Assembly: GCA_965235115.1 (NCBI GenBank)
Contig: OZ249443.1
Span: forward strand, 15,004,001 to 15,068,000
Origin: Laetmonice hystrix
Lineage: Eukaryota
DNA: 64,000 nt
Direction of reading: 5' to 3'
The translations under genes were made by a program, and so were the position numbers. Every line of letters starts with the position of its first letter. Position 1 is the stretch's first letter. A model generated the notes under the pieces. It saw nothing but the letters and a program-made list of their open reading frames with translations. It searched no databases and was not told the origin of the DNA. Below, one piece after another: positions 10,981 to 47,400 of the stretch.

Positions 10981-13900
10981 CTAGGCAGTGTCACACGCTG
11001 CCATATATTCTGTGATGGCTGAACACATGTTTTCGACACCCGCCACGAGTTCAGCCTCCTCGTAGTAACTGATCGAGAAACGGATGCAGTTCCTGTAACT
11101 TCCGCTAGGGGAGCAACTGAAACGAAAGTAACCGAAAACTATTTATACGTAACATACGTCGTGGAAACTTTGACCCAAACATTATACACGACATTAGGTT
11201 GGAGCCCAAAATGAACCAAGAAGTTTTGCGACAATACATCTTGCGACAATCCAATGTCACAAGATATGGCACAAGATATGTATATTCAGCAGCTTCTACA
11301 GCAGTCTTAACATCTTCTTACAAATACAAAATACAAAATACATGGATGTGGTTGGAAGATCAGTGATATGAGTGTGATCTATACGTTAAGTGGGGGATTC
11401 GCGTCATGTGGCCCTGTCAGCCCGCCCATCTAACTAATAACCTCCTACTTTACCTGTAATAAAATATTTAAAAAAAGGAAGTGAAGCATACTTTTTGCCG
11501 GCGATGAACTGGACATCGTATTTGCTCATCGCCAGTTTGGCCGCGACCTCCGCGTCCAATCCGGCTGGCATCACTAGCCAGAAGAAGTAGCCGCCCTTAA
11601 ATAATGAGAAACTGTACTTGTAACTTTGTTGAGCATTCTTGTGCTGGGAGAGGGAATTTGTCACTTGTAGAGCCATTAAAATGTTGAAATGTAGAACCAA
11701 TACATATTGAAGTTTATAGGTCTTATTTTGAATGGCATATAGGCCTAACAAAAGGGGGCGAATGTCAAGTCAGTACAAAGTAGCATATTTATGTGCTTAT
11801 TGCATGTATCGCGTTAACGAGATATTAAAAAACCAGCCAAGAATACGCCCGCTTGCCGTCACTGTTCATTGTTAGACGTAATATAGTCCACCATAATATT
11901 TGAAATTAATAACAGTCATATAATAATTTCTTAGTTCCTCACCTGTGGTATTGTGTACGTGATACTGGTGGGTAGTTTCTCACGCAACACTCTGGTGACA
12001 GCTTCGATTCGAGTCTGTAATGTGTAGGTCAGTATTGGCCCAATGCATGTCCTATATAACAACCTTTCATATATCTGCAATGTGTAGGTCAGTATTGGCC
12101 CAATGCATGTCCTATATAACAACCTTTCATATATCTGCAATGTGTAGGTCAGTATTGGCCCAATGCATGTCCTATATAACAACCTTTCATATATCTGCAA
12201 TGTGTGGTCTGTATTGACCTAATGCATGTGATATATAACAACCTTTCATATACACACATATAGTTATTCTAATGATTAGAATCGTCATCCTGTGTTTCAC
12301 ATGTTTCTGAAATACCCGAGGGCTAATAACTTACTCGCACCACGATAACCATAACCCAACCTCAATAACCCCCACATACCCCCACGGCTAGTCCCAACAT
12401 TCGACTCCGAGAATTATAGTCAACTATACATGTCGTCTTACGTAGATTATGAAACCTGGCGAGAATGATGGAGACTTCAAAAACAAAAAAATAACAATTG
12501 ATTAAATCTATGTCTGTGTTCAGGTAAAGCCGAACAAATCGTCAGTAGGTCGTAGTAGAATGGATTCCACTGCGGCCGAATCTTTCCTTTTTAAAAGAAA
12601 CATTTTTTTCTTTCTCTTTCGCTGTGAGATCGTTGGTGGTTGCTTACGGTGTGCTCCTCCTGCATGTCACGGAGGATTGTTTGCTGGAGGCCCGACTCCA
12701 GCGCCGCCGTCACCAGGTGGGACGCGTAGTGATTAAAACTGCCACCACTCCACGCGATGTTACTGGGCACGGGACACAACTTACTTAGTATTTTACTCAA
12801 CTCTTAATTAGTCATGTCAAAAAAAAACAACAAAACGTTTTCAAATCATTTGACATGACAGTAAGGTAATGACCTGTCAGTATGCTGGTATTGATGGAAA
12901 TATTTGATACCCATGAAAAAATATATCTGCCACTTCTTTTGAATTAAATATCCGGAGTAAGTCGCTAAGTGTTATCGAATGGAGCTGAGAATGACCAATT
13001 ATTTATCCCTGGTCTCGACTCGTCTTTACCTTTTGCTGAGGATGTCTATAATCCTCTGACTCGCCTCGATCCAGCCAACTCGTAGGCCAGGCCCGAGGAT
13101 TTTGGAGAAGGTTCCGTTAGAGATCACGTGGCCATTTTCATCCTTTGCTGACCTGTAGAGATGTACAAATACAATTTGTAAAATTTCTATAGGGGGTGGG
13201 TGGGGTTGGGTTGGGGCCAGGCCCGTGACGCTTCCCTAGGACCCCATGCGTTATCTTATCTTCCGTCGACAGGGAATAGACGCTACAAAAGGTACGTCGC
13301 CTACTTGAATTCGTTTCTTTTTTAGAGACAGATTTCAACCATTGTTTGAAATCTCTTGATTTTGTTCTTGATTTTGTACTGTTACCGACAAAAGAATCTC
13401 CTTCCCGAATGACCTGTACCCTTTTATTATAGACACTCACTCCCGCTCGTAGGCTAGAAGCCGTTTAGGTGGTTGCCCTGTGCTGCTGTAATGTAAGAGA
13501 TTGTAGACGTCGTCACAGAATACCAGCAGGCCGTGGCGTCGGGCCACCTCCACCAGGCGGCGACACCGGTCTGAAAATACATACACGCATTTAGTTAAGG
13601 GGGGGGGGGGGGGGGAGTCACGGTTTCTGGTATTCGCGCGCGTCACTTCCGAAGCAGCGCATTGATCAGTGTTTTTTTTTCTTGCCCTCACCTTGTATGA
13701 ATGTGTGAATTGCGCTGCCACCTGGCGGTAAGGCTTGATACTAACCATTGTTGTCATGGAGATTTCATTTATCACTGTAGCGGAAGTGTGTTGTATTCAA
13801 AGCAATGACAGCCAAGGTCATGGTCCTTGTTTACCGGTTCATTTTACCTGAGGCACCAGCGAACAATCACTATTGGGAATTGGGATTCGGCAACATTTTG

Positions 13901-16900
13901 ACCAGGACACCGGGGTTCTTACCGTCGGGAAGACTGCGCCCGGTCGGGTTGTTGAACGTCGGGATGGTGTAGATCATGCCCCAAAACGGACGCCGGGCTG
14001 TCGTCTCGCGCGCCCCCTGGTGGTGATCCTGAATGAGACTCTCAAGGACGTCCACCTGGAGGCCTTCCTCGTCCGTCGGAACTGAAACCGTGTAAAAAGG
14101 GCACTAGGGGACGTTGGTACATGGTTAACGGTTACAACTTAACCCCCACAAAATAACCCCGATTCTTACACCTCCTAAAAACATGACCTTAAAGGGAATA
14201 GAAAAATTCCTCACTAATGTACCTTTGAACACCAGTAACACCATATAATGTGTCTAAGGTCACACCGATAAGTGGAACACTGTCAACGGCGACTTTTTAA
14301 AAATACCGCCCGGATCATTCGCTATTTCCCACGCGAGACAGCGGGAGCTATATCTATTAATGGATTGAGATAAGGGCCAAATAGGGTAAACAAACGGACG
14401 AAGCCGGCGGGAGAATGTCTCTACATTTCGGTTCATTATTCCTTTATTAAAGATCAGATAATCACAGGATTGTAGGTAAGAACAAGCTTGTTCATTCTGA
14501 ACACCCTTATATTGATAGTTTGAACTTTTCTATTCCCTTTAACCCAAATATTTTGTTTGGAAGTTACCATGGGGGAATAACCCCCTTGGGGTTATTATGC
14601 TAGATCTGTTTCTATATGCGCTCCTTTAGGTTGCTCATGAGGGGTAATATGTTAGGTCTGTTAGGTAGGTTACTGTAGTATGTGCTGGGGAGGGGCAAAT
14701 ATTAGATCTATTAGGTCGACCTATAGGTCATTAAGGGAGCGGGGCGTGTTGGTTGCCAATCACCGGTGAAATATATGCCAGATCTGTTGGCTATGCCACT
14801 GCTGCCCTTAGTAACTTCATACAGGATCGAGGAATGAGGCCCAAACCTGGCACGACCTTCATGCCAAGGTCACCCCGTAGAACGTTAATGGCGATGAAGT
14901 AGGTAGGGTCCTCCACAAACACAACGTCTCCGGTCATCAGGAACTCTGAGGCCGCGAAATGTAAGCCCTGGGTGGCGCCAGCGGTCACCTGGAGGCATGA
15001 ACTGAGGAAAACGGGACCATGTATATCAAAAAGGGGTTGTAACGGGACATTTGATGTGAAAATAGAAAATGATATGGGATGGAACCCGGAAAGGTTACTC
15101 CCGTATGGGAATTATTATGCAGTTCAAAACATCGCAAGCTAAAATACAGGAGAGAACGCATCTGGGCCCAGTTTTCTTTTCGTTTACCGCTTACCGTGGG
15201 CTGAGCACGTCTTTCACATATCCGAACTGTCTTTGCTCATCCTCACCTCACCTTGTCTCAGCTCAGCTCACCCTTGCTCTGGGTGGAAAAGTAAACACAA
15301 AAACCGGACCCTTCAGGAAATGTTTGTATACCTTTTCACCGGATCCTTGTAGCCCTCCGACAGGAATTTCGCCAGTTCTTCCCTGTACGTTGAGCTGCCC
15401 TGTGTGGCCCCATACTGTAGAATCTCTCCAGACAGGCCGTCTGCCGATGACTGGTGTTTCAAAAATTTCAAAAGTGAAAATGATTAATAAAAGATCAAAT
15501 TACAAGTCTTTATCGGGAAGTCCGGAGGAATTTCAGTTAGAGAGAAACACAAGACTCGTAACGTTATTATGAAATACGTGGCTTTTACCGTAAATAACGG
15601 TGTAGGTATTTTGTTTTACTGAAAATATAGTATAGGTACGCTGTATACATGATGGAGGCCAAAGGCTAATAACGCATACGAGAGTTACAAAGTATTTTTC
15701 AATAGGGACTAAGAACTAAGAACGAAATAGTGACTAATACTAATAGACTAATAGGGAAATAGAGATTAAGACTAAGAACGAAATAGTGACTAATACTAAT
15801 AGACTAATAGAGAAATAGGGATTAAGACTAAGAACGAAATAGTGACTAATACTAATAGACTAATAGAGAAATATGGATTAAGACTAAGAACGAAATAGGG
15901 ACTAATACTAATAGACTAATAGAGAAATAGGGATTAAGACTAAAAACGAAATAGGAACTAATACTAATAGACTAATAGATAAATAGGGATTAAGACTAAG
16001 AACGAAATAGGGACTAATACTAATCGACTAATAGAGAAATAGGGATTAAGACTAAGAACGAAATAGGGACTAATACTAATAGACTAATAGAGAAATAGGG
16101 ATTAAGACTAAGAATGAAATAGGGACTAATACTAATAGACTAATAGAGAAATAGGGATTAAGACTAAGAACGAAATAGTGACTAATACTAATAGACTAAT
16201 AGAGAAATAGGGATTAAGACTAAGAACGAAATAGTGACTAATACTAATAGAGAAATAGGGATTAAGACTAAGAACGAAATAGTGACTAATACTAATAGAC
16301 TAATAGAGAAATAGGGATTAAGACTAAGAACGAAATAGTGACTAATACTAATAGACTAATAGAGAAATAGGGATTAAGACTAAGAACGAAATAGTAACTA
16401 ATACTAATAGACTAATAGAGAAATAGGGATTAAGACTAAGAACGAAATAGTGACTAATACTAATAGACTAATAGAGAAATAGGGATTAAGACTAAGAACG
16501 AAAGTTCAGCAATATTTCTTTCTTGAGCTTAGGACAGAGGAAGGTTTCACACACAAGAGAAATTAATATGTAAATAAAGTAAATGGAAGGGACCTCAAGG
16601 AAGTTCGCGAAGTTTACTTGTTTGCTTGGGTGCATATAGAATACGCCGAGCTATTCCTCAATCTGGAGGCTGAGATCTCCACAAAAGGACTGATCGAGTA
16701 GCTTCCCTACGCTTTACTATGCTAAGAGTTCTCATAGAATACGGCTCCGCAGGAGGTCACACTGGATTGCCATATGAAGCTGCATGTTTAAAGCGAGGCA
16801 GAAACTGGTGCCTTATTGCTAAAACAAAGAATGGTTTGGGGGTTCTTGCAGGCACGTGCAGGGTGTGCAAGGGGACGAGGGGGTAACCTTATGTGACACC

Positions 16901-17030
16901 TCACCAGGAGTGACTGGGCTGAATGAACGAGTACTTCCGCTGCGCGCCGGGTGTACTTCCGGCTGGGGAAGCCAGCCGTTAGCATACTCTGGTCCTGGCG
17001 AAATCCGAACTGCTCGCTTAGGGTATTCAT
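10981..17030 (-). CDS. PLP-dependent aminotransferase class I/II (MocR/Aro8/2-aminoadipate transaminase-like), 10 coding exons, 412 aa
   Basis: Exons (minus strand) 17030-16905, 15450-15332, 15001-14847, 14081-13923, 13570-13441, 13152-13030, 12762-12648, 12014-11943, 11595-11492 and 11116-10981 total 1239 nt, all GT-AG and phase-consistent. Motifs: [39 protein letters not shown], the PLP-lysine segment [21 protein letters not shown] and the conserved Arg in CIRFS. Confidence 0.93.
12015..12251 (-). repeat. 60-bp tandem repeat (3 near-identical plus 1 degenerate unit) abutting aminotransferase exon 8
   Basis: Successive 60-nt lines are identical; on the minus strand each intact unit ends actgacctacacatt(a/g)cag. 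Confidence 0.9.
15701..16503. repeat. 56-bp A-rich minisatellite, about 14 copies, in aminotransferase intron 1
   Basis: Unit agactaagaacgaaatagtgactaatactaatagactaatagagaaatagggatta; period confirmed by a 4-nt shift per 60-nt line. Confidence 0.95.
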
Positions 17031-17249
17031 GGTTGATTTTGTTAGTTTGGGGTCCAACGTCCTATCTTAGCTTTATCAACAGAAGCTCTCTACAACACAA
17101 GTAAAGATGTATTCTTCACAGTGCCATGAATGTTCAGTGTTCACATAATGCCAAGTTCAGTGACTTATTGTGAGACTGCCGCATTGATAGGATCCTGTGC
17201 TGAGGAGTAAAAGTCAGTTATTGTGCGCAAATTAAGGGTGGGGTAACTA

Positions 17250-17786
17250 AGACCTGCCAACCTACAGAGAGAAGAAACCGGGAGATTTTTAAAAGTTGAT
17301 GTCCAAAAACCTGGAAATTGGAAGGAGATTACATTATGAAGCTGATATAGAGCTATGAGTGGGGATGAAACGTTAGTATGGAGCCACTACATTCTACACA
17401 TGAAGTACACAACTTACATACCATCAGTTTAATAAATTTAAAATAAAAACACTTAAAATTAGTTGTTATTTATATTTTAAACATGAAATTGTTCACATCA
17501 GCTCCTTTATGTTGTTTCTTTACTCTTTATGTATCTTTTTTTTAGTGTTCTGCGTTGCATGCGTTGCGCACCATACTTAAAAACATACTCAGAAATTATT
17601 TTATCATTATATTTCAAACTTAAAATTGTCCAAACATTATCTATCTTTTTTCTTGTGTTTTGTGTACATTTGTGTGCATACATGACTTTTCAATTTACCG
17701 TGAGAAAATTGTGACATACCGGGGGGACGGGGGATCAGGTTAAAAACCGGGAGTCCCCCAGTGAAACCGGGGGACTTGGCAGGTCT
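17250..17786. mobile_element. MITE-like element between the two alternative first exons
   Basis: Perfect 11-bp inverted ends agacctgccaa / ttggcaggtct, subterminal ccggg motifs and an AT-rich interior. Confidence 0.6.
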
Positions 17787-18045
17787 GGACTTAAGGGCCT
17801 TCGAAAAGCCAAACTTCCCAGTAACCATAGAAACCTTGAGTTCCAATAAAAGATCTACCAGTTGATGCTATTTATGATGCCCCCTCCAATAGTTCTCAGT
17901 ATAGCAGTTTATAGAAAGAACCCATGTTACGATAGTATAGGGCTGCGACTTCCTACGGGATCAGAAAATCGGGAGAGACTTTGCCACCTAAAAAAGCCAC
18001 TAGAGGGAAGCACCTGGAAGATCGCTTCCCTTTGGATATTCTTAC

Positions 18046-18150
18046 CACTACTTTTTGAGTACACTTCAGTACAATCTCTGCCGCGCGCTTTGTGAACTTC
18101 AGACTTGGGTAGCCCAGGACTAACGACATGTTGGTATCACTTGAGCACAT
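18046..18150 (-). CDS. Alternative first coding exon of the aminotransferase (paralogue of exon 17030-16905)
   Basis: Encodes MCSSDTNMSLVLGYPSLKFTKRAAEIVLKCTQKVV, which aligns without gaps to [31 protein letters not shown]. It ends at a phase-0 GTG|GTAAGA donor compatible with exon 15450-15332. An upstream acceptor (tttgtcataacag) starts the exon at 18237. Confidence 0.75.
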
Positions 18151-18434
18151 CTTGTCCGTGGAATAATTACGGTCCGTTAGGAAGCCTTGAGGTTTCTTGG
18201 AATACGGCCTTATCGACTCGTCATTAAAGGTTCCTTCCTGTTATGACAAAGGAAGTGTGTGTGTGAATTGGTGGGTTCCCGCCGTGTTGGAAATTAACTC
18301 CTATTTCATGGAGAAAACATGGCAAAACCAGCTGGTAAAACTATGAAGATTAATCTGTAAAGACAAGGTGTAGTCGGTGAACGATCTCGAGGAGCCTGCA
18401 ATACTCGGGGTATGCGACCTGCTTAAACATATAC

Positions 18435-18465: not shown

Positions 18466-19933
18466 CTGAAAAGGAAATAATCGTGTCAGCAAACTCGAAG
18501 AAATGGCGAGTTTGGGTTTCCGCTTCGTGGACCGTTTCGCTCACAATGATTCCTTTGCTTTCCAAGTCAAAGCTAACTATACCTTTAGGCCTACCTTTAC
18601 TACAAGTTATTCGTCTCTCTCCTGAAATCAAGGGTCGTCTGTGAAGCTATAGGGTTGGCTGCTAGGCACAGAGTGGTCTGAAAGATGGTCTTGGTAATAT
18701 TAAAATAGACCTAGAATCCTAACCACACCTTAAGATGACATTGCAATTCACGATAGAACTGCAGTGATCGATTACAGACAGACTTCAGATCTCCCGTGGA
18801 TTTATTCAAGTTACCCCTATCGTCTACTGAAGCAGTAAGAGATTAGAGTTGTCACTGATAAAATAGATAAGATATCAGAGAGAATAGCCTGCCCAATCAA
18901 TTTGATCTGGTAGGCCTATGTGGGTCGGATTTTCGGGCAGAGTCGGTATCAAAGTAGCTTAGGGTTATAGCAATGCTGTTACGTCGTAACAATCATTGGT
19001 TGGCCTACGAGAGACCAAAATAGTGCTTTATACCGGGATTTGAAATGAAATCGCACCATGCTTTCCAAGGGGAGGCGAGGGGTGCTAAGGGGTGTTTTGA
19101 AGATAGGCCTAAAAAAGGGAGGGACAAAGGAGGCATTATTTGGGCAAGAAGTAGTATACTCGTCCCCCAGCCTCATTCAATCGAGGCACGGGTAATTAGG
19201 CACAGACACATAACCGATAAAATTATGTAATAGATGGTCGTGGATCCCTCCATTGTTGAATTAATTATTGATTGGGGATGTGGGGCGAATAGCTCAGGTC
19301 ATAAGCAATTAGTCATATACGGGCGATTAGACACATACATTATTATGTTCATGATAACAATAGAAATGCATTCATAATGAACGAGATAATTGATAAATAG
19401 CACAGATGCGAATTAAGGTCATGTTCTACACTAAATCAAACCCATTACATGTCGATACTATGTATTTTAATAGAAGGAATAAGTGTTTCTGATTATAAAA
19501 ATGTATAAATATCCATATGTGTCCATGCTAACTTTTGTGTGGGATGTCTATAGAAAATCCATGCCTTGGCTACTTTGAGTGCTTCTTACACTCATCTTGG
19601 GGCCTTCAAGGTAAATTCAAGGCTTTACACAGGCATACATTTCCTATAAACCCAGGCTTATTACAAAAAAATAAGCATGGTGACATAATAGTTATCTACA
19701 CGTTTTTAAACTGAAAAACACTTGTTCTTTCTATTAGAATACAAAATATTGGTATGTAGTGGGTTTGTGTTGTATAGGCCTACATTGGTTACTATGGCGA
19801 GATTTGGCACGAGATTTGAGAGGTGTAGCATATATGACCTTAACAATAGAAAATGCATTCATAATGAATTAGATATTGATAACAATAGCATAGATATAAC
19901 AAGTAAAATCTATAAAGCTAGGAACACACCTGA

Positions 19934-20132
19934 CGCGATGCTACGCGATGCTACGCGATGCTACGCGATGCTACGCGATGCTACGCGATGCTACGCGATG
20001 CTACGCGATGCTACGCGATGCTACGCGATCATTGCTACGCGATGCTACGCGATCATTGCTACGCGATGCTACGCGATCATTGCTACGCGATGCTACGCGA
20101 TCATTGCTACGCGATGCTACGCGATGCTACGC
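19934..20132. repeat. 10-bp tandem repeat (gatgctacgc)n grading into a 24-bp higher-order unit
   Basis: About 9 pure units followed by alternating gatgctacgc / gatcattgctacgc. Confidence 0.95.
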
Positions 20133-20971: not shown

Positions 20972-21302
20972 GGAAAGGTTACAATATTTCCATCTCTGCT
21001 AACCGGCCTCGCCTATTAGAAGCGGCCCACCCACGTACAATATTATTGTACAATATTCAGGTTTGCGCAATATTATTGACCGTCTATTGTCATATTGAAG
21101 CACTGCACCATTGTTTCAAGTATTGTTTCAATATTATTGACATTTAAGAGATCTGACAGGGCTTGTTCTACAGCAGGCTAGCGGTAGAACAGATAATAGA
21201 TGGGGAGGGGGGGGGGGGCACTTTGCTTGATGCAATATTGGGGGGGGGGGGCAATATTTTGCTTGAGGTAGTGGAACATGGTTGTAGGCCTATCATAATT
21301 AT

Positions 21303-24045: not shown

Positions 24046-26304
24046 GTTTTGGCAGGACGCAGGCTCTGACCGTGAGTTCACGCAGTTCGTGTCGTCCAAC
24101 CGTCGATCGCGTTACGTCGCGGCGTCCGGCCCTGTCATCTTCCCAGAAGGCACCTCTTCTGACGTGCGTTTTTTGACGTCACACAAAGATCGCGGTTGAT
24201 TGGCTCTAAGTGGCTTTAATTGGAATGGCCAATAAAGATTGCGATAATGGGTCGTAAACAGATGCCGAACATTCTGTGATGAGAGATACAGCCTTCAAAT
24301 ACCCAAACCGGGACCCCCCCGACCCCCCGACCCCCCAACCAGCAATCTCCTTATCCCTGCTGAGTTATAATTGATGATAAAACCACGCCTTGCACCGATC
24401 TTAAATACCAAAAAAATGTTGCTTGGAATTTAATTATGTGTTAATTGCTTAAATTGCATTTAGAATTCGACAATGGCTCACATGATCCTGCAAATGGGCT
24501 CACAACAGTTAATAGCTTCAGCATTATACCAATTATACATTTCAAACGCCAAATTATTTTCTTGCCTACTCATGCAGTTTATGGAAAGAATGTCCATAAT
24601 ATTTTCGGGATTAAATTTTAAAGTATGATAAACTATGAAAGGGGATTAATTTAGGATACTTAGCTAGTAAGCATTCAAGAATATAGCTGTTCTCGTTGAC
24701 AGACTTGATGGTTTAAAAGCTGGTCGTTCTTTAAAACTGGATCTGGCGCCAAAGGCAGGGCTTTTAGAGCCTTAAACCAGACCTCAGCAATCCAACAATG
24801 GCACGCCTGTCTCCTTAAACCGTTACTTTACATGACTTACTCAATAACATTCTTATCTGGCCAATCGCTCACTTCCCCGTATTACAAATACACATGAACG
24901 TGGGAAATGTCAACCAGTAATCCCCCAAGAGAATCCATTGGGGATTGTGACTGTACCTCCAGTAAACTTGGAGTCCCCGGGAAGTTGGTAATCCACACCG
25001 AGGGGTTGGAACACTAGGACCAGTGTGGCCAAAGCCACCACAACCCTGGCCTGACGGCAGGCAGACCTACTGGTATTCGGACATGTCAGAAGTGGCTCCC
25101 TGTCATCAGTTGACACCTTCTATCACGTAGGCCATCGCTGGAGGCGAGACACGTCCGAGTATTGGCTCCCTGGAGGTTTAGCTTGAAAGGTTGAGAAAAG
25201 TGTAGGTGTTTGTGCAAGTGTGCATGGTTGTGTGGTCATGCGTGCGTATACAAGTAGTATGCTCCTGCTTATATGGAGAGCTCTCTAGTATAACCATTCA
25301 CGTACATTTGCGTGCATGGGCGTAACTTATTACATGCATATTTTTAGGATATGTGCAAATCTGGATTATTATTGGGCGGGCATAAAACAAATTATCGAAA
25401 AGTGGCGTTAAATGTTAAGAATATCAGGGTATTTACCCCTGTAACTTCTCAGAAGCTTGTGACAGGTTTAAAAAAATATTTTGATATAATTTTTATTGTT
25501 AATGTTCGACAAGAGGGGTTTTATGTCCACCCTATGTATTATAGTAGGCCTATGTATATTTAGTGTGAGTCCTGCGCCCGTACATGACAAATGATGTACA
25601 TGTACATTATAGAGACTACATGTAAGAGTTTGTGTCTTTATATGCAAAATTGTAACTGTAAACAATGTACAAATGTAAACATGTATAAGCTATGAATCAA
25701 TGGATTCATTGACAAACATTACATAGTAATCAAGCTAACGTCCGTACAGATCATTACATCATTGCGAACTGATAGCTCACGCCACGACAGTGACGGTCAC
25801 TTTATAACACGTTGTTGTTTGGATGAAGAGACCAGAGGCCCAGGGCGAAATGTTTGCTCCGTGAATCATTGGACGTGACACCCGTGCGTGTTTCCCTAAA
25901 TGAGATTTTGTTTGTCTTGGCACGCTGTAGTAGACTAATTGAGCGTCACTGGCGCCAGGCCCCATGTCATTACAACGGTATTGTAAAACGCGAAGAACAC
26001 GGTTAATTTAGCAATCAAACCGAGAGAAACGGCACCACCCGTTAACAACTTCTGTTAGCTTCCAGTGGAAGTAATTGTAGAGTTGTACGTATTGTTCCAC
26101 GCTTTCTCTATGGGTCGGCTGTGCGCTGGCCTGCTTTCATTTAAAACCACGGTTATAAGTACCAACCACGTTGTCCTATATATCGGAGTATGAATCTGGT
26201 GACTTGCTTTATGAAAGGATTGAACATGGATAGCTAACAAGTTATTCCACTATTGGAACATTTAGGGTATGTGGCAGATATAGGGGGTCCGGTACAGAAT
26301 TTTG

Positions 26305-27135
26305 GACAGGTCTGGGGACAGATGGTAGGCCCTATAGGATAATTTAGGGTTAGGGTCTGGGGACAGATGGTAGGAGTTAGGGTTAGGTTTGGGGTTATGG
26401 TCTGGGGACAGATGGTATAGGAGTTATGGTTAGTTTTGGGGTTAGGGCCTGGGGACAGATGGTATAGGAGTTATGGTTAGTTTTGGGGTTAGGGTCTGGG
26501 GACAGATGGTATAGGAGTTATGGTTAGTTTTGGGGTTAGGGTCTGGGGACAGATGGTATAGGAGTTATGGTTAGTTTTGGGGTTAGGGTCTGGGGACAGA
26601 TGGTAGGGGTTAGGTTTGGAATTATGGTCTGGGGACAGATGGTATAGGAGTTATGGTTAGTTTTGGGGTTAGGGTCTGGGGACAGATGGTATAGGAGTTA
26701 TGGTTAGTTTTGGGGTTAGGGTCTGGGGACAGATGGTAGGGGTTAGGTTTGGGGTTATGGTCTGGGGACAGATGGTAGGAGTTAGGGTTAGTTTTGGGGT
26801 TAGGGTCTGGGGACAGATGGTAGGAGTTAGGGTTAGGTTTGGGGTTAGGGTCTGGGGACAGATGGTAGGAGTTAGGGTTAGGTTTGGGGTTATGGTCTGG
26901 GGACAGATGGTAGGAGTTATGGTTAGTTTTGGGGTTAGGGTCTGGGGACAGATGGTAGGAGTTAGGGTTAGGTTTGGGGTTAGGGTCTGGGGACAGATGG
27001 TATAGGAGTTATGGTTAGTTTTGGGGTTAGGGTCTGGGGACAGATGGTAGGAGTTAGGGTTAGGTTTGGGGTTAGGGTCTGGGGTTAGGGTCTGGGGACA
27101 GATGGTATAGGAGTTATGGTTAGTTTTGGGGTTAG
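26305..27135 (+). repeat. 45/47-bp G-rich minisatellite containing TTAGGG motifs
   Basis: Unit ggttagttttggggttagggtctggggacagatggtataggagttat and variants, about 18 copies. Confidence 0.92.
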
Positions 27136-30100
27136 AGGTATATTCCGGGGACAGGTTACCGGGAGAGATTTGCCCTCAACAGAGAGAATTGACCAAAAGT
27201 GGAAACTCGGACACTCTTCACTGATAGATAATGGGATCCTTGCCTAGAAAAGGGGTCCACCCGTGAACCCCCTGACCCCAACCTTGACCCGACCTAGAAC
27301 TTAGAGGTATGAATGACGTCTCCCGTACGTTAAAATAGAAAACAGACACTTTTACGATCCAAAATTGTTATGTTTTAGCGATTATGTCAGCAAACCTGAC
27401 AGGGTCGAGGTATATATTAGTCATTTAGAATGGTTTCTGTGTGAAACGGGTTCCCCAACCCATGCAGGAAAAATAAGGATGAAGGGCTCGATCGGGTCGC
27501 GTCGTCTATAGGCTGGTGGCTTGTTTATCTCTCATGCACACCCACGCACACGCACACACCCACGCACACATTACGTGACGGAATCTAAGGTTACCTATCA
27601 AAGATCCGTACACAGGTACGACATGCATGTACTGAAGTGATGCGATCAGTACGAGCATTCCAGTATGCCATCGCGCAGGCTTCAAAACACCACCCTCCAA
27701 AACTGAACTCCCAACGCCTCCTGACATTCCTGGAAATGGCTGTCATCAAAACACGCTGACGTCTGTAGGTCTATGTTTGCGTCACACGTGCAAGTCTACA
27801 GGCGTCACACAGTCCTGTGCTTGTCATATACGGTGGCATTGTCCATAGATCACCAACCCGGACCAAAGAGAACTTTCTATTATAATCACATCATTTAGAC
27901 TTTCACCAAAATGTAGCCTAACTGTTACACAGATAAACATTTCAACACTTAGAAACAATTTTGTACCACAGTCACATCTAGCTTCACTCGCAGAGTGCGA
28001 ATAAACTTTCCCTGCAGCACAGTAGACAGTAGTCAAAAACCTTCATCATCGCATAATCTGAGGATGTCTGTAATTCAGTAAGTCTCTTTGAAAATAATCA
28101 AGCGTCACTTTTGGAACGAAAAAGAAATTTTAGAGATTATCAAGTGTCATTTTTTGAATATGAAAAAGAATCAACATTAGCCTCATTGTAAATACTTCGA
28201 ATTAGTCCGTATAAAGTCAGTCTCCTCACGATAAGGCAGCATTAACCCAGTTTGAACCCACCCCCTCCTCAAAAAAGTGGGGAAAATCTACCTTCCTCAA
28301 AAACTCCGTAAATAGCCATAGATTTTCATCAGTGGCGTTCAATGTGTGAGAGAGGCATTTCGGATGCACTGCACACTGTCACTTGAGGTCATTGGAGGTT
28401 TTACCATAAAAATAATAAAAACATTGATGATGATATCAACTTAATGGGACAAAAATCATTCCCTTAATACACAATAGCATGTAATTTCGCGATATGTTAA
28501 TTTAACTTGGTTAACAGCCGCCCTGACCGACCCTCTTTAACCTCGGGTAGCGGCGAGGAGAGGATGATTAGCGGTAAAACATGGAGTTTTAGCATCGGCT
28601 ACTGGCACTGACGGTCGGGACCCAGGGTAGATCATGTGTACGGGTCCTGACAGTGGATCAACTGTGTAGGGAAAGAGGCATGTAGGTCATCCGGCATTAC
28701 ACAGTATTATCCTTGGTCAAATAAAGTGAAAAAATCCACATAAAGGCAAGGGAAGCCGAGTACACATGTGTGCGTGACTTGCAGCTTGATCTTTCCATTA
28801 CCAGACAGTCTGTGGCTCTTTTAGTTGGTAATTATACACACCAGACGGTAGTCATCGGTATTCAGACGATTCGCAGGTACACAGCGATAGCTCATATACC
28901 TCGCTCAATAATACGCCAATTGTCAACGCTCTGAAATGTTTGTGGGAAAAACTAGAACAAAAAAATGGGGATAGGTATCCGGTCGGACCTTCCCGGGGAG
29001 TCGGTCTTGTGTTCCTTGGAAATGTATAATGCATGCAAGTGAAGGTTGTATGCTACTAGAATATTAATTTACGTAAGTATTATCCAGGGTAGGACACTGA
29101 ATCACTGACACTGAATGTGATTTAACCGTCCACCTAGGCGTTTAACGGATCGAAAGAAAATCAGGAAAATGCAGACATACACACACACGAACACTGAACT
29201 GTTTGTTCTTACATTTTGTCATCGACCTATGGTCAATGACAAGATGGGAACCTCTTCAGTTTCTGGTGTGGATTTATGACCATTGATTCAAGGTAAGCTC
29301 CCTCTCGATGATCAGTTTTAACCTTTCTACAAAGTGAAAGAATGAAATTTAATAATTTCCCACCCAATCTTGAATCTTGATTTTGTGTTGGATATGCAGA
29401 CGTAGCGCCACTTTGATAAAAAGATAGTTCTAAAGCTACCATCAGGGTGCGCCCCATACAGTGTGCCACCAGGGGGCGGGCCTGGTGTTTCCATTCAGTC
29501 GGTCCCTACATTCCGCGACAGCCCCCTCCCGCCCAACCACTCCACCACGACGGTAGCTCACCTGAGTCGGCCTCCCTGACCTACAAACCGCAATAGTAAA
29601 ATCAGCTGATCCACGTAAGGCCGGCTTTTGGCCGGTATACCTCATCAATCTGGGAGCCCAAGGAACATGGCTTGGTCACCTAACAGGGGTAGTTTGATGT
29701 CGTCTATTTAAAGTCAGAATGTAGAATGACATGTATGAAGAAATACTCCTTCCTCATTCAATTTCTTGTGATTTATTTCCACTACAATTAGAAAATGGCC
29801 CTAAGAAAAGAATTGTTTTTTTTCTAAGTTTAAACGATTAGACGCACGAATACTGAATTTGGACTGTATATAATGCCACATTCCTAGTGTAAATTAGAAC
29901 GTAAAACCTGAATTTCAGGCAGGGGTGGTAATTCTAATTAAATTAGGATAATTCAGATTTTCCTAGGAAGGGTCTCTAAATTATCATTAATTGGGTCAAA
30001 TTGTGGCCTCGTTACATATATTTTGCCAACATATTGGTGGAAAGGTATGTAAGGGGAAGGTGATGTCTGTGGATCTTTCAGGATATATTAAATAATAAAA

Positions 30101-37937: not shown

Positions 37938-38200
37938 TTTACCCTACCCTATATCCTCCCTGGGAGATGTTACAAGGAGAGGATCAAGCCGGATCCTTGT
38001 GTATAGGTTGATACACCTGTATCTACCTCAGCGTTGTTGTGGTTCACGCTCACCTGTGGTAAAAATTGGCCACTGTGTCACGCTCTAGTTCCCCGACCCG
38101 TCCGCTAGAGGGCCTTCCCAATCATCTCAAACAAGTGTTGACTGCTGAGAGAGTTGCTCCCCCGTGTGGTATCATCCCTACGATATTTGGGGTCGGAGTT

Positions 38201-38902
38201 AGGGGCAGGGGTGGAGCAGAGGTAGGGCAGGGCTGTATCAGGGGTAGGGCAGGGGTGGAGCAGAGGTAGGGCAGGGGTGGAGCAGGGGTAGGGCAGGGGT
38301 GGAGCAGGGGTAGGGCAGGGGTGGAGCAGGGGTAGGGCAGGGGTTGGGCAGAGAGTGGAGCAGGGGTTGGGCAGGGGTGAAGCAGGGGTAGGGCATGGGT
38401 GGAGCAGGGGTAGGGCAGGGGTGGAGCAGGGGTAGGGCAGGGGTGGAGCAGGGGTAGGGCAGGGGTAGGGCAGGGGTGGAGCAGGGGTAGGGCAGGGGTG
38501 GAGCAGGGGTAGGGCAGGGGTGGAGCAGGGGTAGGGCAGGGGTGGAGCAGGGGTAGGGCAGGGGTGGAGCAGGGGTAGGGCAGGGGTGGAGCAGGGGTAG
38601 GGCATGGGTGGAGCAGGGGTAGGGCATGGGTGGAGCAGGGGTAGGGCAGGGGTGGAGCAGGGGTAGGGCAGGGGTAGGGCAGGGGTGGAGCAGGGGTAGG
38701 GCAGGGGTGGAGCAGGGGTAGGGCAGGGGTGGAGCAGGGGTAGGGCAGGGGTGGAGCAGGGGTTGGGCAGGGGTAGAGCAGGGGTAGAGCAGGGGTGGAG
38801 CAGGGGTTGGGCAGGGGTTGGGCAGGGGTTGGGCAGGGTTAGGGCAGGGGTGGAGCAGGGGTGAAGCAGGGGTTTGGCAGGGGTGGAGCAGGGGTAGGAC
38901 AG
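38201..38902 (+). repeat. 22-bp (2 x 11-bp) G-rich minisatellite
   Basis: Unit ggggtagggca-ggggtggagca, about 30 copies. It explains the Pro/Cys-rich ORFs 38105-38605 and 38238-38993. Confidence 0.95.
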
Positions 38903-40428
38903 GGGTATCTGTGAGATGTATGTGTGCCAGGTCTGGAGACCAGAGAGTAGGAGTTAGGAATAGGTTTTGGATGAAGAAGCGATACGTTTTCACTTTCTCT
39001 CACCAGATTTAGTGGCGATGTTACCATGGAGACAGAACGTTCAAAGACCTACTTGTAGATTGAAGGACACTCTCAAGGTTATTTCAGCGAATTAAAGTCT
39101 TATTGATTCCACTTTATTATCGGGGTAGATACGATGACATTAGATTATGTGGTGTTAGTTTATTTGACTGAATGTGGCGTGTATTGCTTACGCTGTACGA
39201 CGTGTAGGCGTGCATTCACACAAGACGTTTGGAGTGTGTGTTATGGGGTGTGTTTTAACCGCATGCGTGCGTGCACTGCATGTCAACAAGTCGCTGGTTG
39301 TGTGTCCAAGAATGGGTGCAGTGAGGTGTCAAACGTTTACACAGTTTACGGTGACCCCCCCCCCCCCGGCTGATGTATCCTTGCTATTTCCATTATGATC
39401 ATCGTCATTCATGACGTCTATAATTATTAAATCCCTCGTCAAGATATATGTCGTATTTCTCTAAGGGTGGCTTAAATTAATAAACTTTGTCCTGAAACAA
39501 CTCTCACATTTGGTGCATGAGAATTTCGATTTTGTTTCCTTAAGAGTTTTGGGGCAATTTGTGTGTAGCATGAAGGGGGGAAACTCAGTTCGTCATTTTA
39601 CCAATCTTAAGCCTGGATTTAAGACTGACTTGTGTCATGGCTGACTTCATTTGAAAAACCAATCAGAAGCTCTGAAACAAGAGTTCAGTCTTAATATTTG
39701 AATCTTAAGACTCGGTATGCAAATTCTTACAATCTAAAAAGACTCCGGAGTGGTTGGTTGGTGTGAGTTGTAGTTTCGGTGGGCAACACTTTGATTGATA
39801 AACCCATGTCAACATAAATCATGTAACTGTTATCAATCAAGTAACGAGCCTGGTTGGGCATGAGCCTGGGGTGAGGCGGGGACAGGCCTGGCTCACTCAG
39901 GTTGGTTTCACTGGGTCGGATGCACAACCAGGTTTCCATGGAGATTTAGATGGGGCGAAAGGGGTCTATACCAAATCTGTGGTACTTCAATGATTATTGT
40001 CATGGCGTCCAGCAATTCTTCAAAATATTTCTTATAGAATTGGTAATCGCAACGCAGTCCACTTCCATGCCGGTTATACCAAACAAACAAAAAAAAACAC
40101 CAAAAAAACCCGCAAAAAAGACACTTGACATTTTGGCCGGTAGCCATACCTTATCACCCCGTCCCAGTCCGATCTCACATGGGGAGAATGAGGAAATTAC
40201 CCTCAATGACATTACAGTTAAATCATGATTAATTCTACCACTCGTCCCTGTAGGCAGGGATTGCGAGTCGCCAACTTGTTTTTCACGTTCCGCCCCAGAT
40301 GTAACTCTAAATGCCACGTCTGTAGAAGAAGGCTGAGACTGAGACGCCACGTTCATACTCCCACCTTACCTGACCATATATGGTAGTGATACTCATACTT
40401 GACTAGCGTAAGGAGACTCGGGGCCAGG

Positions 40429-44412: not shown

Positions 44413-47400
44413 GTCGCCGGCTCCACGCCCCATAATACGCTGTTGTAGGTCATTCTCTGATGGTAACATTCCTAGGAAATGTGGGGTAGCAGTTTGGGTT
44501 AGAGCAGGGGTAGAGATAGAAATGTTTTAGGGGGAGGTCTGGGGATCGGAAGGATCGATTAAGATTACACTTCGGAATCGGAATAAAGGTAGATTTTTAG
44601 TTCTTGGCACCAGATTTTGAGGATATATTGCCATGGGGGATCTACTGGATTGCAACTCGAGTCACTCAGCAGGAAGCCGCCTCGAAATCCACTTGCCCTG
44701 GAGCAGCTAACTGATAAGGGATTGTTGAATGGCAATATGAGAATACGTGTTCAAGCCCTCCTCGTCATCTTGTATGGAGTTAAAGCACAGGGACGAGCCA
44801 GTTGACTGTTCGGTAGGGGAAGGGCCGGGGGCAGGCAAGTCCTCAAATGGACCAGGACATGGAACGTATAGAGTCCAATAACTTCGTATGCCCAACCCAC
44901 CGCAACTTCAAAGGTCTTTTATTCATTCCAGACCAACTCATGCATTGTGACTTTATACCACCTTCAAATGTATCTTAATCTTCTTTATTGGGAACATCTT
45001 TACCGATTAAGTATTGCAAATTAAATGCTTTCAGTGTATGTGTGAATATCGCTGCAGGGCAATTCTACCAAAATACTTCCATTCATTGTACGCGTCCACT
45101 CGTATACCGCCAAGGTGTTTGAGTACGTCGCCCCATAACGTTACTCTACCTACCTTTCTTCAAAGCCGACTTTGCCCTGGAGAGATATGTTGTAAATTTT
45201 AGGCTGCTCTTGGAAATGCAACGAAAATGCCGAGCTCAAAAGGAGCAGTAAAGGTTTGGAATGTCAGTGACGTTGCCTGGCAACGCCATGACGTCAAGGT
45301 GGTTTGTGAATATGCAAAACACTGTCTGACTCATACCTTGACATATTGGGGAAAAAATTGGTGGGGCATATGGTCGAGGCCTGGGTGTATAGTAAACAAA
45401 TGCAAGTGGGACAATAAACAATATGATTAATATACTGTCCCTGTATGGTGGCGATCGATACGGTCATCTAGGTTATAAGGTGAACGAAACAATTAATCTA
45501 ACCCGTATATAAAAATATATATAAAAAATTAATTTAAAAAAATGCATGAACGCCGCAAGGGGGAGCGCCATGGTGAATTCGGTCTAATGTAACAAACAAC
45601 AGTTCACCCTGAAGCCTAAGATGTACACATCGTCTGTCCATCCGTCAGGCAGTCAGTCTGCCGGCCGGCAAAATGACCTCTTTAGTTTGATGTTTTCTCC
45701 TAGTGACGAAAGTCTGTCATTAGTAATCCGCCCACGGAGGTCGAGTATATCCCTCCTGACGTGACACACAGCATACCCTGGATCTGAACAACCTGTAACC
45801 TTGCTTTACCACACCGCATACATAAATCCTTGCAGTAAAAAAAAACAAAAAACATACATGAACTTCATATAGCGGAGCAGTGAGAGACTGAATGGCCCTG
45901 TTATAGTCAGTATTTGAGCCATTAGTATTCAGGGCAAGGATATAACTTTCAAACTTATTCAGTTATGGGACCTATTGTACCCTCGAGTCCCGTGGTCATG
46001 AAGATAGGGATGAAGTGAGAACTTAAGTAACCCGTCGCCGGCAGGCAACATTATTTTTTTAAATGGAAAGGGGGTTTTATGCACAGCCTACAGACACGGC
46101 TGGAGATACCAGCACCAGCGATGACCCTCTTGTGGAGCACTGGGAAGGGCACTGAGAGATTAATGGTACTGTAAGGATTTAAATCGAAAACCATCTGTCC
46201 AACACACATGATTTTGCCCTCAGAAACTCTGTACCACTTCTTCACGCAAGCCCTCGCCCCATCTGTCGCCTCTTACCAAAAGCCTCTGGAGAAGCAGAGA
46301 TCATTATATCAGTGATATAACTGAATATGTCAGCGCGGTTTCCCTAGAAGCCATTTCCCGGTTAAGCCCCTTTCCAATTATAATTTTCCAGTGGTAGTTT
46401 CTCATCTGTTTTCAACAGGCCTACATCATATGCTCTTCGTTAAAACGATATTTTTTTATCTTGGGTATTTTGTACATCGTGAGGATCTGCCACATGAGAT
46501 GAATCAAAGTCGACGTATAGATACCATGTGTTGTTCATACGTTTTAAAGGGCAATGTATCATGCCGGACCCAGTCGTTCTCTCCCAGAGACTCCTAGCGG
46601 TGAACAGGGCTGAACAAAGGTGAACACCGACCTGTTCAATCGCTCTTGTCACCCGTGTCTGTCACCATGACTCCCTGGTCAGCGTGACAGCGGAGTGATC
46701 CCTGCTACCGTTCCCAGCGTCTCCATCTCTGACAGGTGTACAATACGTGCTGCCACGGGGGCCATTTCACAGGTAAAGCGGGGCTTGTTCAACACAGCTC
46801 CCCGGCCTGGACACCCACCACAAACACCCTATCATCTACAGGTGTGGGCCCTAACACTTCAACCATCGACCATCACCGCTACACTGGGCATTCTATACAA
46901 TATCAGATCCTCAGCACAGTTGCAGCCCAATGGTAAAATTGTAAGTGCCATTCAGGCCCCACAAAAGGGCCATTCACAGGGATAATTTGCTCAGGAGTTG
47001 TGGGGCCATAAAGACCAGTGAATGGGCGGATTCACACCTTCACAAGGACTCTGAGGGCATGCGGTACGGGACTGGAAGCAGAAAAAAACCACACATACCC
47101 ATACGTTATACTTCCTACCTTTTTATACCAACTGGTTTCATTGCAAATGTTGCCAATGCAGATGGAGAAAACGTGCCTCGTGTCAATTAAGGGGCGAGCA
47201 ACGAGTAGTTATAGTTTATATTTGATCTGTGAAATCGAAAATGTAAAAGTTGTAGTTTCCCGAGCTCGCCCTTGAACTGAAGACGCCATCTTAAAAATAA
47301 TGATTTACATTTTCCCTTTCATCCACAAGGATCGAGTTTGACCTCGCCTTATCAGTTGTATTATAAATTACACGCCAATTATATATGGGGACGGGTTATT

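What the first reader, a model, noticed from the sequence alone, without database searches (positions are those of the whole stretch)
16905..18237. Duplicated, mutually exclusive start exons give the aminotransferase two different N-termini
Exon 18237-18046 (SLVLGYPSLKFTKRAAEIVLKCTQKVV) and exon 17089-16905 ([28 protein letters not shown]) are homologous: 11 of the last 26 residues are identical, most others are conservative, and codons have diverged at synonymous sites. Each has its own acceptor, its own ATG and a phase-0 donor into the common exon at 15450. Joining both gives a stop 16 codons into the second exon, so they must be alternatives. In fold-type I aminotransferases the N-terminal L-x-x-G-x-P segment helps form the substrate pocket. 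One locus may therefore encode two enzymes with different substrate preference or localisation (inference).
Basis: partly seen in the sequence, partly recalled or inferred. Interest (0 to 1): 0.72.

Follow-up and report, generated by a model that had tools for sequence, protein, structure and literature searches.

The report
Aminotransferase gene with two start exons
A worm's only YER152C-like (aminoadipate/kynurenine-type) aminotransferase gene has two old, intact, interchangeable first coding exons for the arm that lines the substrate pocket; clams, sea urchins and acorn worms have the same layout, so it probably makes two enzyme versions, but no RNA data could confirm this here.

Summary
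The minus strand carries a clean 10-exon gene (10981-18237), the only YER152C-like / 2-aminoadipate-transaminase-like gene in this annelid-like genome. Exons 18237-18046 (1A) and 17089-16905 (1B) are homologous: 11/26 identical, and each is the other's only real hit among 2,922 open frames in the window (E about 2e-4). Each has an ATG with A at -3 and a phase-0 GT donor that fits exon 2 at 15450. Joining both gives a stop at the 16th codon of 1B.

Synonymous sites are saturated (pS 0.75) while pN is 0.38, so both copies have long been constrained. Both keep the family-invariant G-x-P.

The mRNA of the closest relative found (57% identity) starts with a short exon equally like 1A and 1B. Orthologues in Mercenaria, Mya, Glandiceps, Strongylocentrotus, Lytechinus, Asterias and Amphiura have RefSeq isoforms that differ only by such homologous first exons. 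I confirmed two or three tandem copies in genomic DNA of three of these species.

No RNA run of this species was served, so use of both exons here is inferred (about 0.7). A localisation difference is not supported. This is a new member of a known kind, tandem-duplicated alternative exons. Earlier notes of this scan record other either/or exon clusters in other genes of this genome.

The parts
18046..18237 (-). Exon 1A, the upstream alternative first coding exon. CDS 18150-18046 (35 codons, starts MCSSDTNMSLVLGYPS...). 18237-18151 is 5' leader with one 4-codon uORF.
   Evidence: AG before 18237, A at -3 of the ATG, GT donor in phase 0; homologous to exon 1B and to the first exon of relative P0216; another individual has no change in the CDS but a 1-nt insertion at 18232, so the leader is non-coding.
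16905..17089 (-). Exon 1B, the downstream alternative first coding exon. CDS 17030-16905 (42 codons, starts [23 protein letters not shown]...). In-frame stops lie upstream of the ATG.
   Evidence: its start aligns from residue 1 with orthologue N-termini such as coral P0016 (MSTLFDFLG...); one heterozygous His-to-Gln variant at 16923 (effect worked out).
15332..15450 (-). Common exon 2 ([19 protein letters not shown]...), the phase-0 acceptor for either first exon.
   Evidence: Weak PF00155 match.
10981..15001 (-). Common exons 3-10: 15001-14847, 14081-13923, 13570-13441, 13152-13030 (holds the PLP lysine, TFSK), 12762-12648, 12014-11943, 11595-11492, 11116-10981 (stop).
   Evidence: all introns are GT-AG, and one open frame gives 405 aa (A) or 412 aa (B); all 25 family-invariant columns are kept; same exon layout as Mercenaria.
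17090..18045 (-). Intron between exons 1A and 1B (956 nt), mostly a high-copy repeat (about 17245-17860).
   Evidence: word depth is in the thousands against about 80 for the flanks.
15701..16503 (.). 56-bp minisatellite (14.5 copies) inside the intron between exon 1B and exon 2.

Best explanation
The window holds the genome's single YER152C-like aminotransferase gene. This family is fold-type I, PLP-dependent, and close to 2-aminoadipate / kynurenine aminotransferase II and Aro8.

Its first coding exon exists as two tandem, long-diverged copies. A transcript carries either 1A or 1B joined to exon 2. The proteins (405 or 412 residues) are identical except for the first 35 or 42 residues.

That segment is the N-terminal arm with the invariant G-x-P motif. 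The profile aligns it with the GGLP of archaeal KAT II homologues. Equating it with Gly39-Leu40-Pro41 of human KAT II rests on my own knowledge of the human sequence; those residues touch the ligand, next to the Arg20-Ser32 entrance gate. The isoforms should therefore differ at the mouth and wall of the active site: Tyr versus Phe at x, an arm 7 residues longer in B, and different charges. That points to a difference in substrate range or kinetics.

Shown: the exon anatomy, the homology, constraint on both copies, and the same architecture in other phyla.

Inferred: expression of both exons in this animal, the way one is chosen (separate promoters or splicing from a shared leader exon), and the biochemical difference.
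For: - Anatomy and frame logic.
- Homology beyond chance.
- Selection: pS 0.748 (saturated) against pN 0.381, p 0.0065. A copy that had been neutral for that long would not keep 42% identity, its ATG, its open frame and its donor.
- Both copies keep G-x-P, which is invariant in 55 family members including bacteria. Both isoforms keep all 25 invariant columns.
- The first 34 residues of the mRNA-derived protein P0216 (57% identical overall, in-frame stops before its ATG) hit 1B (E 2.8e-4) and 1A (E 3.4e-4) equally, and nothing else in the window. So neither copy has drifted faster. P0216's short start matches 1A, and its GYPSL-FTKR string is 1A-like.
- In a 32-column tree the three form a clade (99/97), with P0216 nearer 1B (92/86). 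This hints that the duplication predates that species split.
- Precedent: RefSeq isoforms of orthologues differ only by homologous first exons that end at the same junction. Tandem copies were confirmed in DNA: Mercenaria 2, Glandiceps 3, Lytechinus 3.
- Orthologous alternative exons are conserved between two sea urchins: 17/28 and 20/28 identical, against 9-12/28 between types.
- Pocket role: the profile aligns the motif with GGLP of archaeal KAT II homologues. KAT II contacts are taken from PMC6629613 and PMC4926479.
Against: - No RNA evidence for this species. The single run search returned three DNA-like runs, and laying them gave no exon-exon joints.
- A family N-terminal HMM that finds both Mercenaria exons (42 and 34 bits) scores 1A and 1B at only 1.9 and 3.8 bits. 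The arm is divergent in this lineage, so family-level constraint cannot be used to validate each copy.
- Three other annelids (Capitella, Owenia, Lamellibrachia) show a single first exon within 10 kb upstream.
- Only one isoform of the closest relative was found.
- The dN/dS estimate rests on 28 codons and cannot exclude recent loss of one copy.
- One His-to-Gln polymorphism lies in 1B.
Confidence: 0.7

Rival explanations
1. One of the two exons is an unused relic of an old exon duplication. Only the other makes protein.
For: No RNA support for either junction. Other annelid orthologues have one first exon. Both copies score poorly against the family N-terminal profile. Only one isoform was seen in the closest relative.
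Against: Synonymous sites are saturated while pN is 0.38. Both copies keep the ATG with a good context, the open frame, the invariant G-x-P and a consensus donor. Both are equally distant from the relative's exon. Another individual has no disabling change in either CDS. Multi-copy clusters are maintained in other phyla.
Confidence: 0.17
2. Exon 1A serves mainly as a 5' leader. It is spliced to the AG at 17089, giving a 1A-1B-exon 2 transcript. The 1A reading frame then acts as a 50-codon upstream ORF that ends 12 nt before the 1B ATG and tunes translation, or triggers decay, of the B isoform.
For: A plausible acceptor with a pyrimidine tract precedes 17089. The joined frame stops at 17044-17042, just before the 1B ATG.
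Against: This does not explain why 1A keeps protein-level homology to 1B and to the relative's coding exon, nor the phase-0 donor that fits exon 2. In orthologues the equivalent exons are annotated as alternatives, never joined.
Confidence: 0.08
3. Exon 1A is an internal coding exon read in frame from an upstream coding exon, since the whole exon is open in frame 0. That would give a longer N-terminus, possibly a targeting peptide, as in some Amphiura isoforms.
For: All 64 codons of exon 1A are open. Amphiura isoforms read from a shared upstream exon (MHRFSSKLKQTKLIRT) through the 5' extension of the alternative exons.
Against: Another individual carries a 1-nt insertion at 18232, inside that 5' part. 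29 open codons are expected by chance about one time in four (my estimate). The relative's mRNA has in-frame stops before its equally short start.
Confidence: 0.05

Closest known systems
Tandem-duplicated, mutually exclusive (substitution) exons, as reviewed in PMC9013439 and PMC9741552
   Same: Adjacent homologous exons on one strand, each fitting the same neighbour exon. Inclusion of both breaks the frame. They swap a homologous protein segment. They are old and under selection.
   Different: Here the duplicated unit is the first coding exon, with its own ATG in each copy. The choice may therefore be made by alternative promoters rather than by splicing competition. No clear docking/selector RNA pairing was found. 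Usage is unverified.
RefSeq isoform sets of orthologues, e.g. Mercenaria mercenaria XP_053373649.1/XP_053373650.1, Mya arenaria XP_052809080.1/XP_052809088.1, Glandiceps talaboti XP_077986875.1/XP_077986876.1, S. purpuratus XP_030853487.1/XP_030853488.1, Lytechinus variegatus X1-X3
   Same: Same gene family, same exon, same phase-0 junction just before the QYG exon, each copy with its own ATG, two or three tandem copies.
   Different: Those exons carry GAPG against GRPG, GKPG or GQPG. The window has GYPS against GFPS. The 32-column tree suggests separate duplications per lineage (weak). These are automatic annotations, and my searches found no paper describing them.
Human kynurenine aminotransferase II / AADAT and archaeal KAT II homologues (PDB 2QLR, 1X0M, 3AOV)
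   Same: Fold-type I PLP enzyme of the same subgroup: relative P0216 matches at E 5e-46, the family profile at 5e-91. The N-terminal arm holds the G-x-P motif, whose Gly and x residues contact ligands.
   Different: The window's arm is much shorter (9 or 16 residues before the motif, about 35 in KAT II), so most of the Arg20-Ser32 gate is absent. Identity is about 25-35%. No alternative arm exons are known to me for AADAT (own knowledge).
Yeast YER152C
   Same: It gives its name to the orthologue annotations. It is an uncharacterised aminotransferase, detected as a KAT-like hit (PMC5610271).
   Different: It is a single-exon fungal gene. Its deletion did not lower kynurenic acid further in aro8 aro9 cells, so the family's substrate is still unknown.

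Membership tests
Fold-type I PLP aminotransferase, AADAT / KAT II / Aro8-like subgroup (YER152C-like) | Aminotran_1_2 (PF00155) domain and full-length similarity to family members | tested here: met
   Single exons give weak PF00155 hits below the cut-off. The spliced model is 38-57% identical over about 390-410 residues to proteins that carry PF00155. The family profile hits KAT II homologues at 5e-91.
Fold-type I PLP aminotransferase, AADAT / KAT II / Aro8-like subgroup (YER152C-like) | Catalytic PLP-binding lysine and the other invariant residues | tested here: met
   All 25 columns invariant in 55 members are kept in both isoforms, including the Lys of TFSK, NP of NNPTG, GGYFFW and the C-terminal Arg.
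Fold-type I PLP aminotransferase, AADAT / KAT II / Aro8-like subgroup (YER152C-like) | Transaminase activity and substrate | not testable with these tools
   No member of the YER152C-like branch has a defined substrate in what I read.
Mutually exclusive tandem exon cluster | Adjacent, same-strand, homologous exons | tested here: met
   The exons are 956 nt apart. There is no third copy in the window: the candidate at 46080-46178 was rejected.
Mutually exclusive tandem exon cluster | Either exon keeps the frame; both together break it | tested here: met
Mutually exclusive tandem exon cluster | Transcripts contain one or the other, never both or none | not testable with these tools
   No RNA run of this species was served. 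X1-X3 are DNA contigs.
Mutually exclusive tandem exon cluster | Both copies conserved (purifying selection, presence in relatives) | tested here: inconclusive
   pN is well below pS between the copies, and both are equally distant from the relative's exon. The relative's genomic 5' region could not be reached, and three other annelids have a single exon.

The most novel reading that the evidence does not exclude
The exon for the pocket-lining N-terminal arm of this aminotransferase family may have been duplicated independently in several animal lineages: bivalves, sea urchins, starfish, brittle stars, acorn worms and this annelid lineage. Each time it was kept as an either/or exon that changes the residue x of G-x-P. 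That residue is Ala against Arg, Lys or Gln in other phyla, Gly against Val in Asterias, and Tyr against Phe here. This would be a recurrent way for one gene to encode two or more substrate specificities.
Probability: 0.3. Interest if true: 0.7.

Novelty: new member of a known kind. Interest (0 to 1): 0.5.

Why it matters
If both exons are used, a single-copy metabolic enzyme gene makes two active-site variants by swapping the arm that forms one wall of the substrate pocket. The same exon is multiplied in at least four phyla. This singles out that arm as the family's specificity switch, and it gives a concrete handle on an orphan aminotransferase family, YER152C-like, whose substrate is unknown. 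For genome annotation, it warns that first-exon alternatives of this gene are real isoforms and not prediction noise.

Tried and rejected
- **RNA evidence.** The one run search gave only three DNA-like runs of one sample. Laying them showed genomic coverage, repeats and polymorphisms, but no splice joints. Earlier notes mention RNA data for this species in other genes, but none surfaced for this stretch.
- **Own or congeneric proteins.** All three word-index searches and the representative search found nothing closer than P0216 (57%). The window's own protein is not in the collection.
- **Family N-terminal HMM.** It works as a positive control in Mercenaria, Glandiceps and Lytechinus but does not detect the window's exons. 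It could not be used to validate them.
- **Third exon copy.** The best extra hit (46080-46178, E 0.13) lacks the invariant Gly, an ATG and a donor. Rejected.
- **Long N-terminus read through exon 1A.** Disfavoured by the 1-nt insertion allele at 18232.
- **Paralogues.** None; the family has a single member in this genome.
- **Genomic 5' region of the P0216 species.** The contigs reached cover exons 4-9 only. A metagenome scan with an exon-1 pattern found nothing.
- **Docking/selector RNA pairing.** Only four short imperfect inverted repeats (13-17 nt) were found, no more than chance would give.
- **S. purpuratus locus.** It was withheld.
- **Not done.** I did not type the spliced 405/412-residue proteins into any tool, so no exact look-up, fold or complex prediction of the window's own isoforms was made.

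Full report
**What is there.**
The minus strand of 10981-18237 encodes one gene with all-GT-AG introns. The common exons are:
- 15450-15332
- 15001-14847
- 14081-13923
- 13570-13441
- 13152-13030
- 12762-12648
- 12014-11943
- 11595-11492
- 11116-10981

Upstream lie the two exons of the finding.
- Exon 1A (18237-18046) has ATGs at 18150 and 18129 and the donor GTG|GTAAGA.
- Exon 1B (17089-16905) has its ATG at 17030 and the donor CTG|GTGAGG.

Either one joins exon 2 in phase 0, giving open frames of 405 (A) or 412 (B) residues. Joining 1A to 1B gives a stop at 17044-17042, the 16th codon of 1B and 12 nt before the 1B ATG. All three ATGs have A at -3.

**Is the similarity real?**
- Over the last 26 residues, 11 are identical and 8 more are conservative.
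- The BLOSUM62 local score is 64, against 20 +/- 3.8 (maximum 43) in 5,000 shuffles.
- In an unbiased search of all 2,922 open pieces of the six frames of the window, each exon finds the other at E about 2e-4, and nothing else below E 2.7.
- At the DNA level only 38 nt still align.
- Over 28 codons, pS is 0.748, the saturation value, while pN is 0.381 (Fisher p 0.0065).

A copy evolving neutrally for that long would have lost the protein similarity, so both copies were constrained for most of their history. A recent death of one copy cannot be excluded from 28 codons.

**What gene is it?**
- Exon-wise Pfam hits are weak matches to PF00155.
- An exon 4 search in PDB points to KAT II homologues, AADAT and Aro8.
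- Full-length relatives (38-57% identity) are named 'uncharacterized protein YER152C-like' or '2-aminoadipate transaminase-like' in cnidarians, molluscs, annelids, echinoderms, hemichordates and insects.
- The family profile hits archaeal KAT II homologues at 5e-91 and human KAT II at about 5e-53.
- Both isoforms keep all 25 columns that are invariant in 55 members, including the PLP lysine.
- The gene is the only family member in its genome.
- Earlier notes of the scan call this genome annelid-like. The best matches here, to bivalves, Owenia and Capitella at about 46%, fit a lophotrochozoan.

**What the alternative segment does.**
G-x-P is invariant from bacteria to animals. The profile aligns it with the GGLP of 'ISLAGGLPNP' in the archaeal KAT II homologues. 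That this equals Gly39-Leu40-Pro41 of human KAT II rests on my own knowledge of the human sequence.

In human KAT II:
- Leu40 and Tyr74 give the hydrophobic contact to kynurenine, and Gly39 hydrogen-bonds inhibitors (PMC6629613).
- The Arg20-Ser32 loop of the N-terminal arm is the entrance gate (PMC4926479).

Exon 1 therefore encodes a wall and the mouth of the substrate pocket. The two versions differ as follows:
- x is Tyr in A and Phe in B.
- The motif is followed by SLKFTKR in A and SRKYTRR in B.
- There are 9 residues before the motif in A and 16 in B.

Neither start resembles a targeting peptide (my reading of the sequence), so I expect a difference in substrate range or kinetics, not in localisation.

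**Comparative evidence.**
*Closest relative.* P0216 (57% identity) comes from a 1,622-nt transcript contig with in-frame stops before its ATG.
- It starts MDKTKAFNLLAGYPSLCFTKR..., which is short like 1A.
- Its first 34 residues hit 1B and 1A equally (E 2.8e-4 and 3.4e-4) and nothing else in the window. Neither copy has drifted faster.
- In a 32-column tree the three form a clade (99/97), with P0216 nearer 1B (92/86). This hints that the duplication is older than that species split (few columns).

*Orthologue isoforms.* RefSeq isoforms differ only by homologous first exons that end at the same junction. This holds in Mercenaria, Mya, Glandiceps, S. purpuratus, Lytechinus (three exons), Asterias and Amphiura (four or five).

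*Genomic DNA.* I confirmed tandem copies upstream of one common exon 2:
- Mercenaria: 2 copies.
- Glandiceps: 3 copies, one of them unannotated.
- Lytechinus: 3 copies.

*Conservation of each type.* Orthologous alternative exons of the two sea urchins are 17/28 and 20/28 identical. Different types are 9-12/28 identical, so each type is maintained.

*Pocket residue.* The residue x is often what changes between alternatives:
- Ala against Arg (Mercenaria, S. purpuratus).
- Ala against Lys (Mya).
- Arg, Gln and Ala (Lytechinus).
- Gly against Val (Asterias).

*Origin of the duplications.* The tree suggests lineage-specific duplications: the Asterias pair groups at 99/98, and the bivalve second type sits inside the mollusc clade. 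Resolution is poor.

*Other annelids.* Capitella, Owenia and Lamellibrachia show one first exon within 10 kb upstream.

**What could not be shown.**
No RNA run was served for this stretch. The three runs laid are DNA contigs of another individual. They gave useful polymorphisms:
- No change in the 1A CDS.
- A 1-nt insertion plus a substitution at 18232, which argues that the open 5' part of exon 1A is leader, not coding.
- One heterozygous His-to-Gln change in 1B at 16923 (codon effect).

Whether the exons have separate promoters or are spliced from a shared leader is open. Amphiura shows that the splicing mode exists in this family. No convincing competing RNA structure was found.

**Verdict.**
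The reading 'two alternative N-termini from duplicated exons' is well supported by selection and by cross-phylum precedent, but expression is unproven here (about 0.7). The rivals are a silent relic copy (0.17), a leader/uORF role for 1A (0.08) and a longer read-through N-terminus (0.05).

My literature searches found no description of this exon cluster. The general phenomenon is well known, so this is a new member of a known kind.

Noticed in passing
window 12014-12252: A 60-bp tandem repeat (4 copies, 96% matches) fills the end of intron 7. Its last copy supplies the acceptor of exon 8 at 12014, and the earlier copies each carry an acceptor-like ...cacattgcAG.
   Followed up: partly
window 15701-16503: A 56-bp minisatellite (14.5 copies) lies in the intron between exon 1B and exon 2. 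Its unit is 82-87% complementary over 15-17 nt to 18293-18309, just upstream of exon 1A. Probably chance; untested as an RNA pairing.
   Followed up: partly
window 17245-17860, 19240-20030, 21013-21200: High-copy repeats: word depth is in the thousands in DNA runs, against about 80 for the flanks. These are probably transposon fragments. The first fills most of the intron between the two alternative exons.
   Followed up: no
window 26001-28000 and 38001-40000: Two 2-kb bins with strong GC skew (0.32 and 0.41). The second also has raised G+C (0.53).
   Followed up: no
L021:39336-39647 (Glandiceps talaboti): A third intact-looking copy of the first coding exon (...LVAFRGSPSLKSLEDCMEIMNRATSNRL followed by GT) lies between the two annotated alternatives. 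It is not used in either RefSeq isoform that I saw.
   Followed up: partly
L017:22124-23092 (Mercenaria mercenaria): The intron after exon 6 holds several degenerate repeats of the exon's end (WIEAPPRIMQYLEK-like), i.e. a repeat array seeded by an exon fragment.
   Followed up: no
Amphiura filiformis and Asterias rubens isoforms (P0198, P0120, P0359, P0279): Some isoforms add a basic upstream segment (MHRFSSKLKQTKLIRT..., MFMPTTARLSRAALTSARYLS...) in front of the alternative exon. It looks like a mitochondrial presequence, so in echinoderms localisation and pocket variants may be combined.
   Followed up: no
The S. purpuratus contig carrying the orthologue was returned as withheld without DNA, although the window's protein is only about 40% identical to it.
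   Followed up: no
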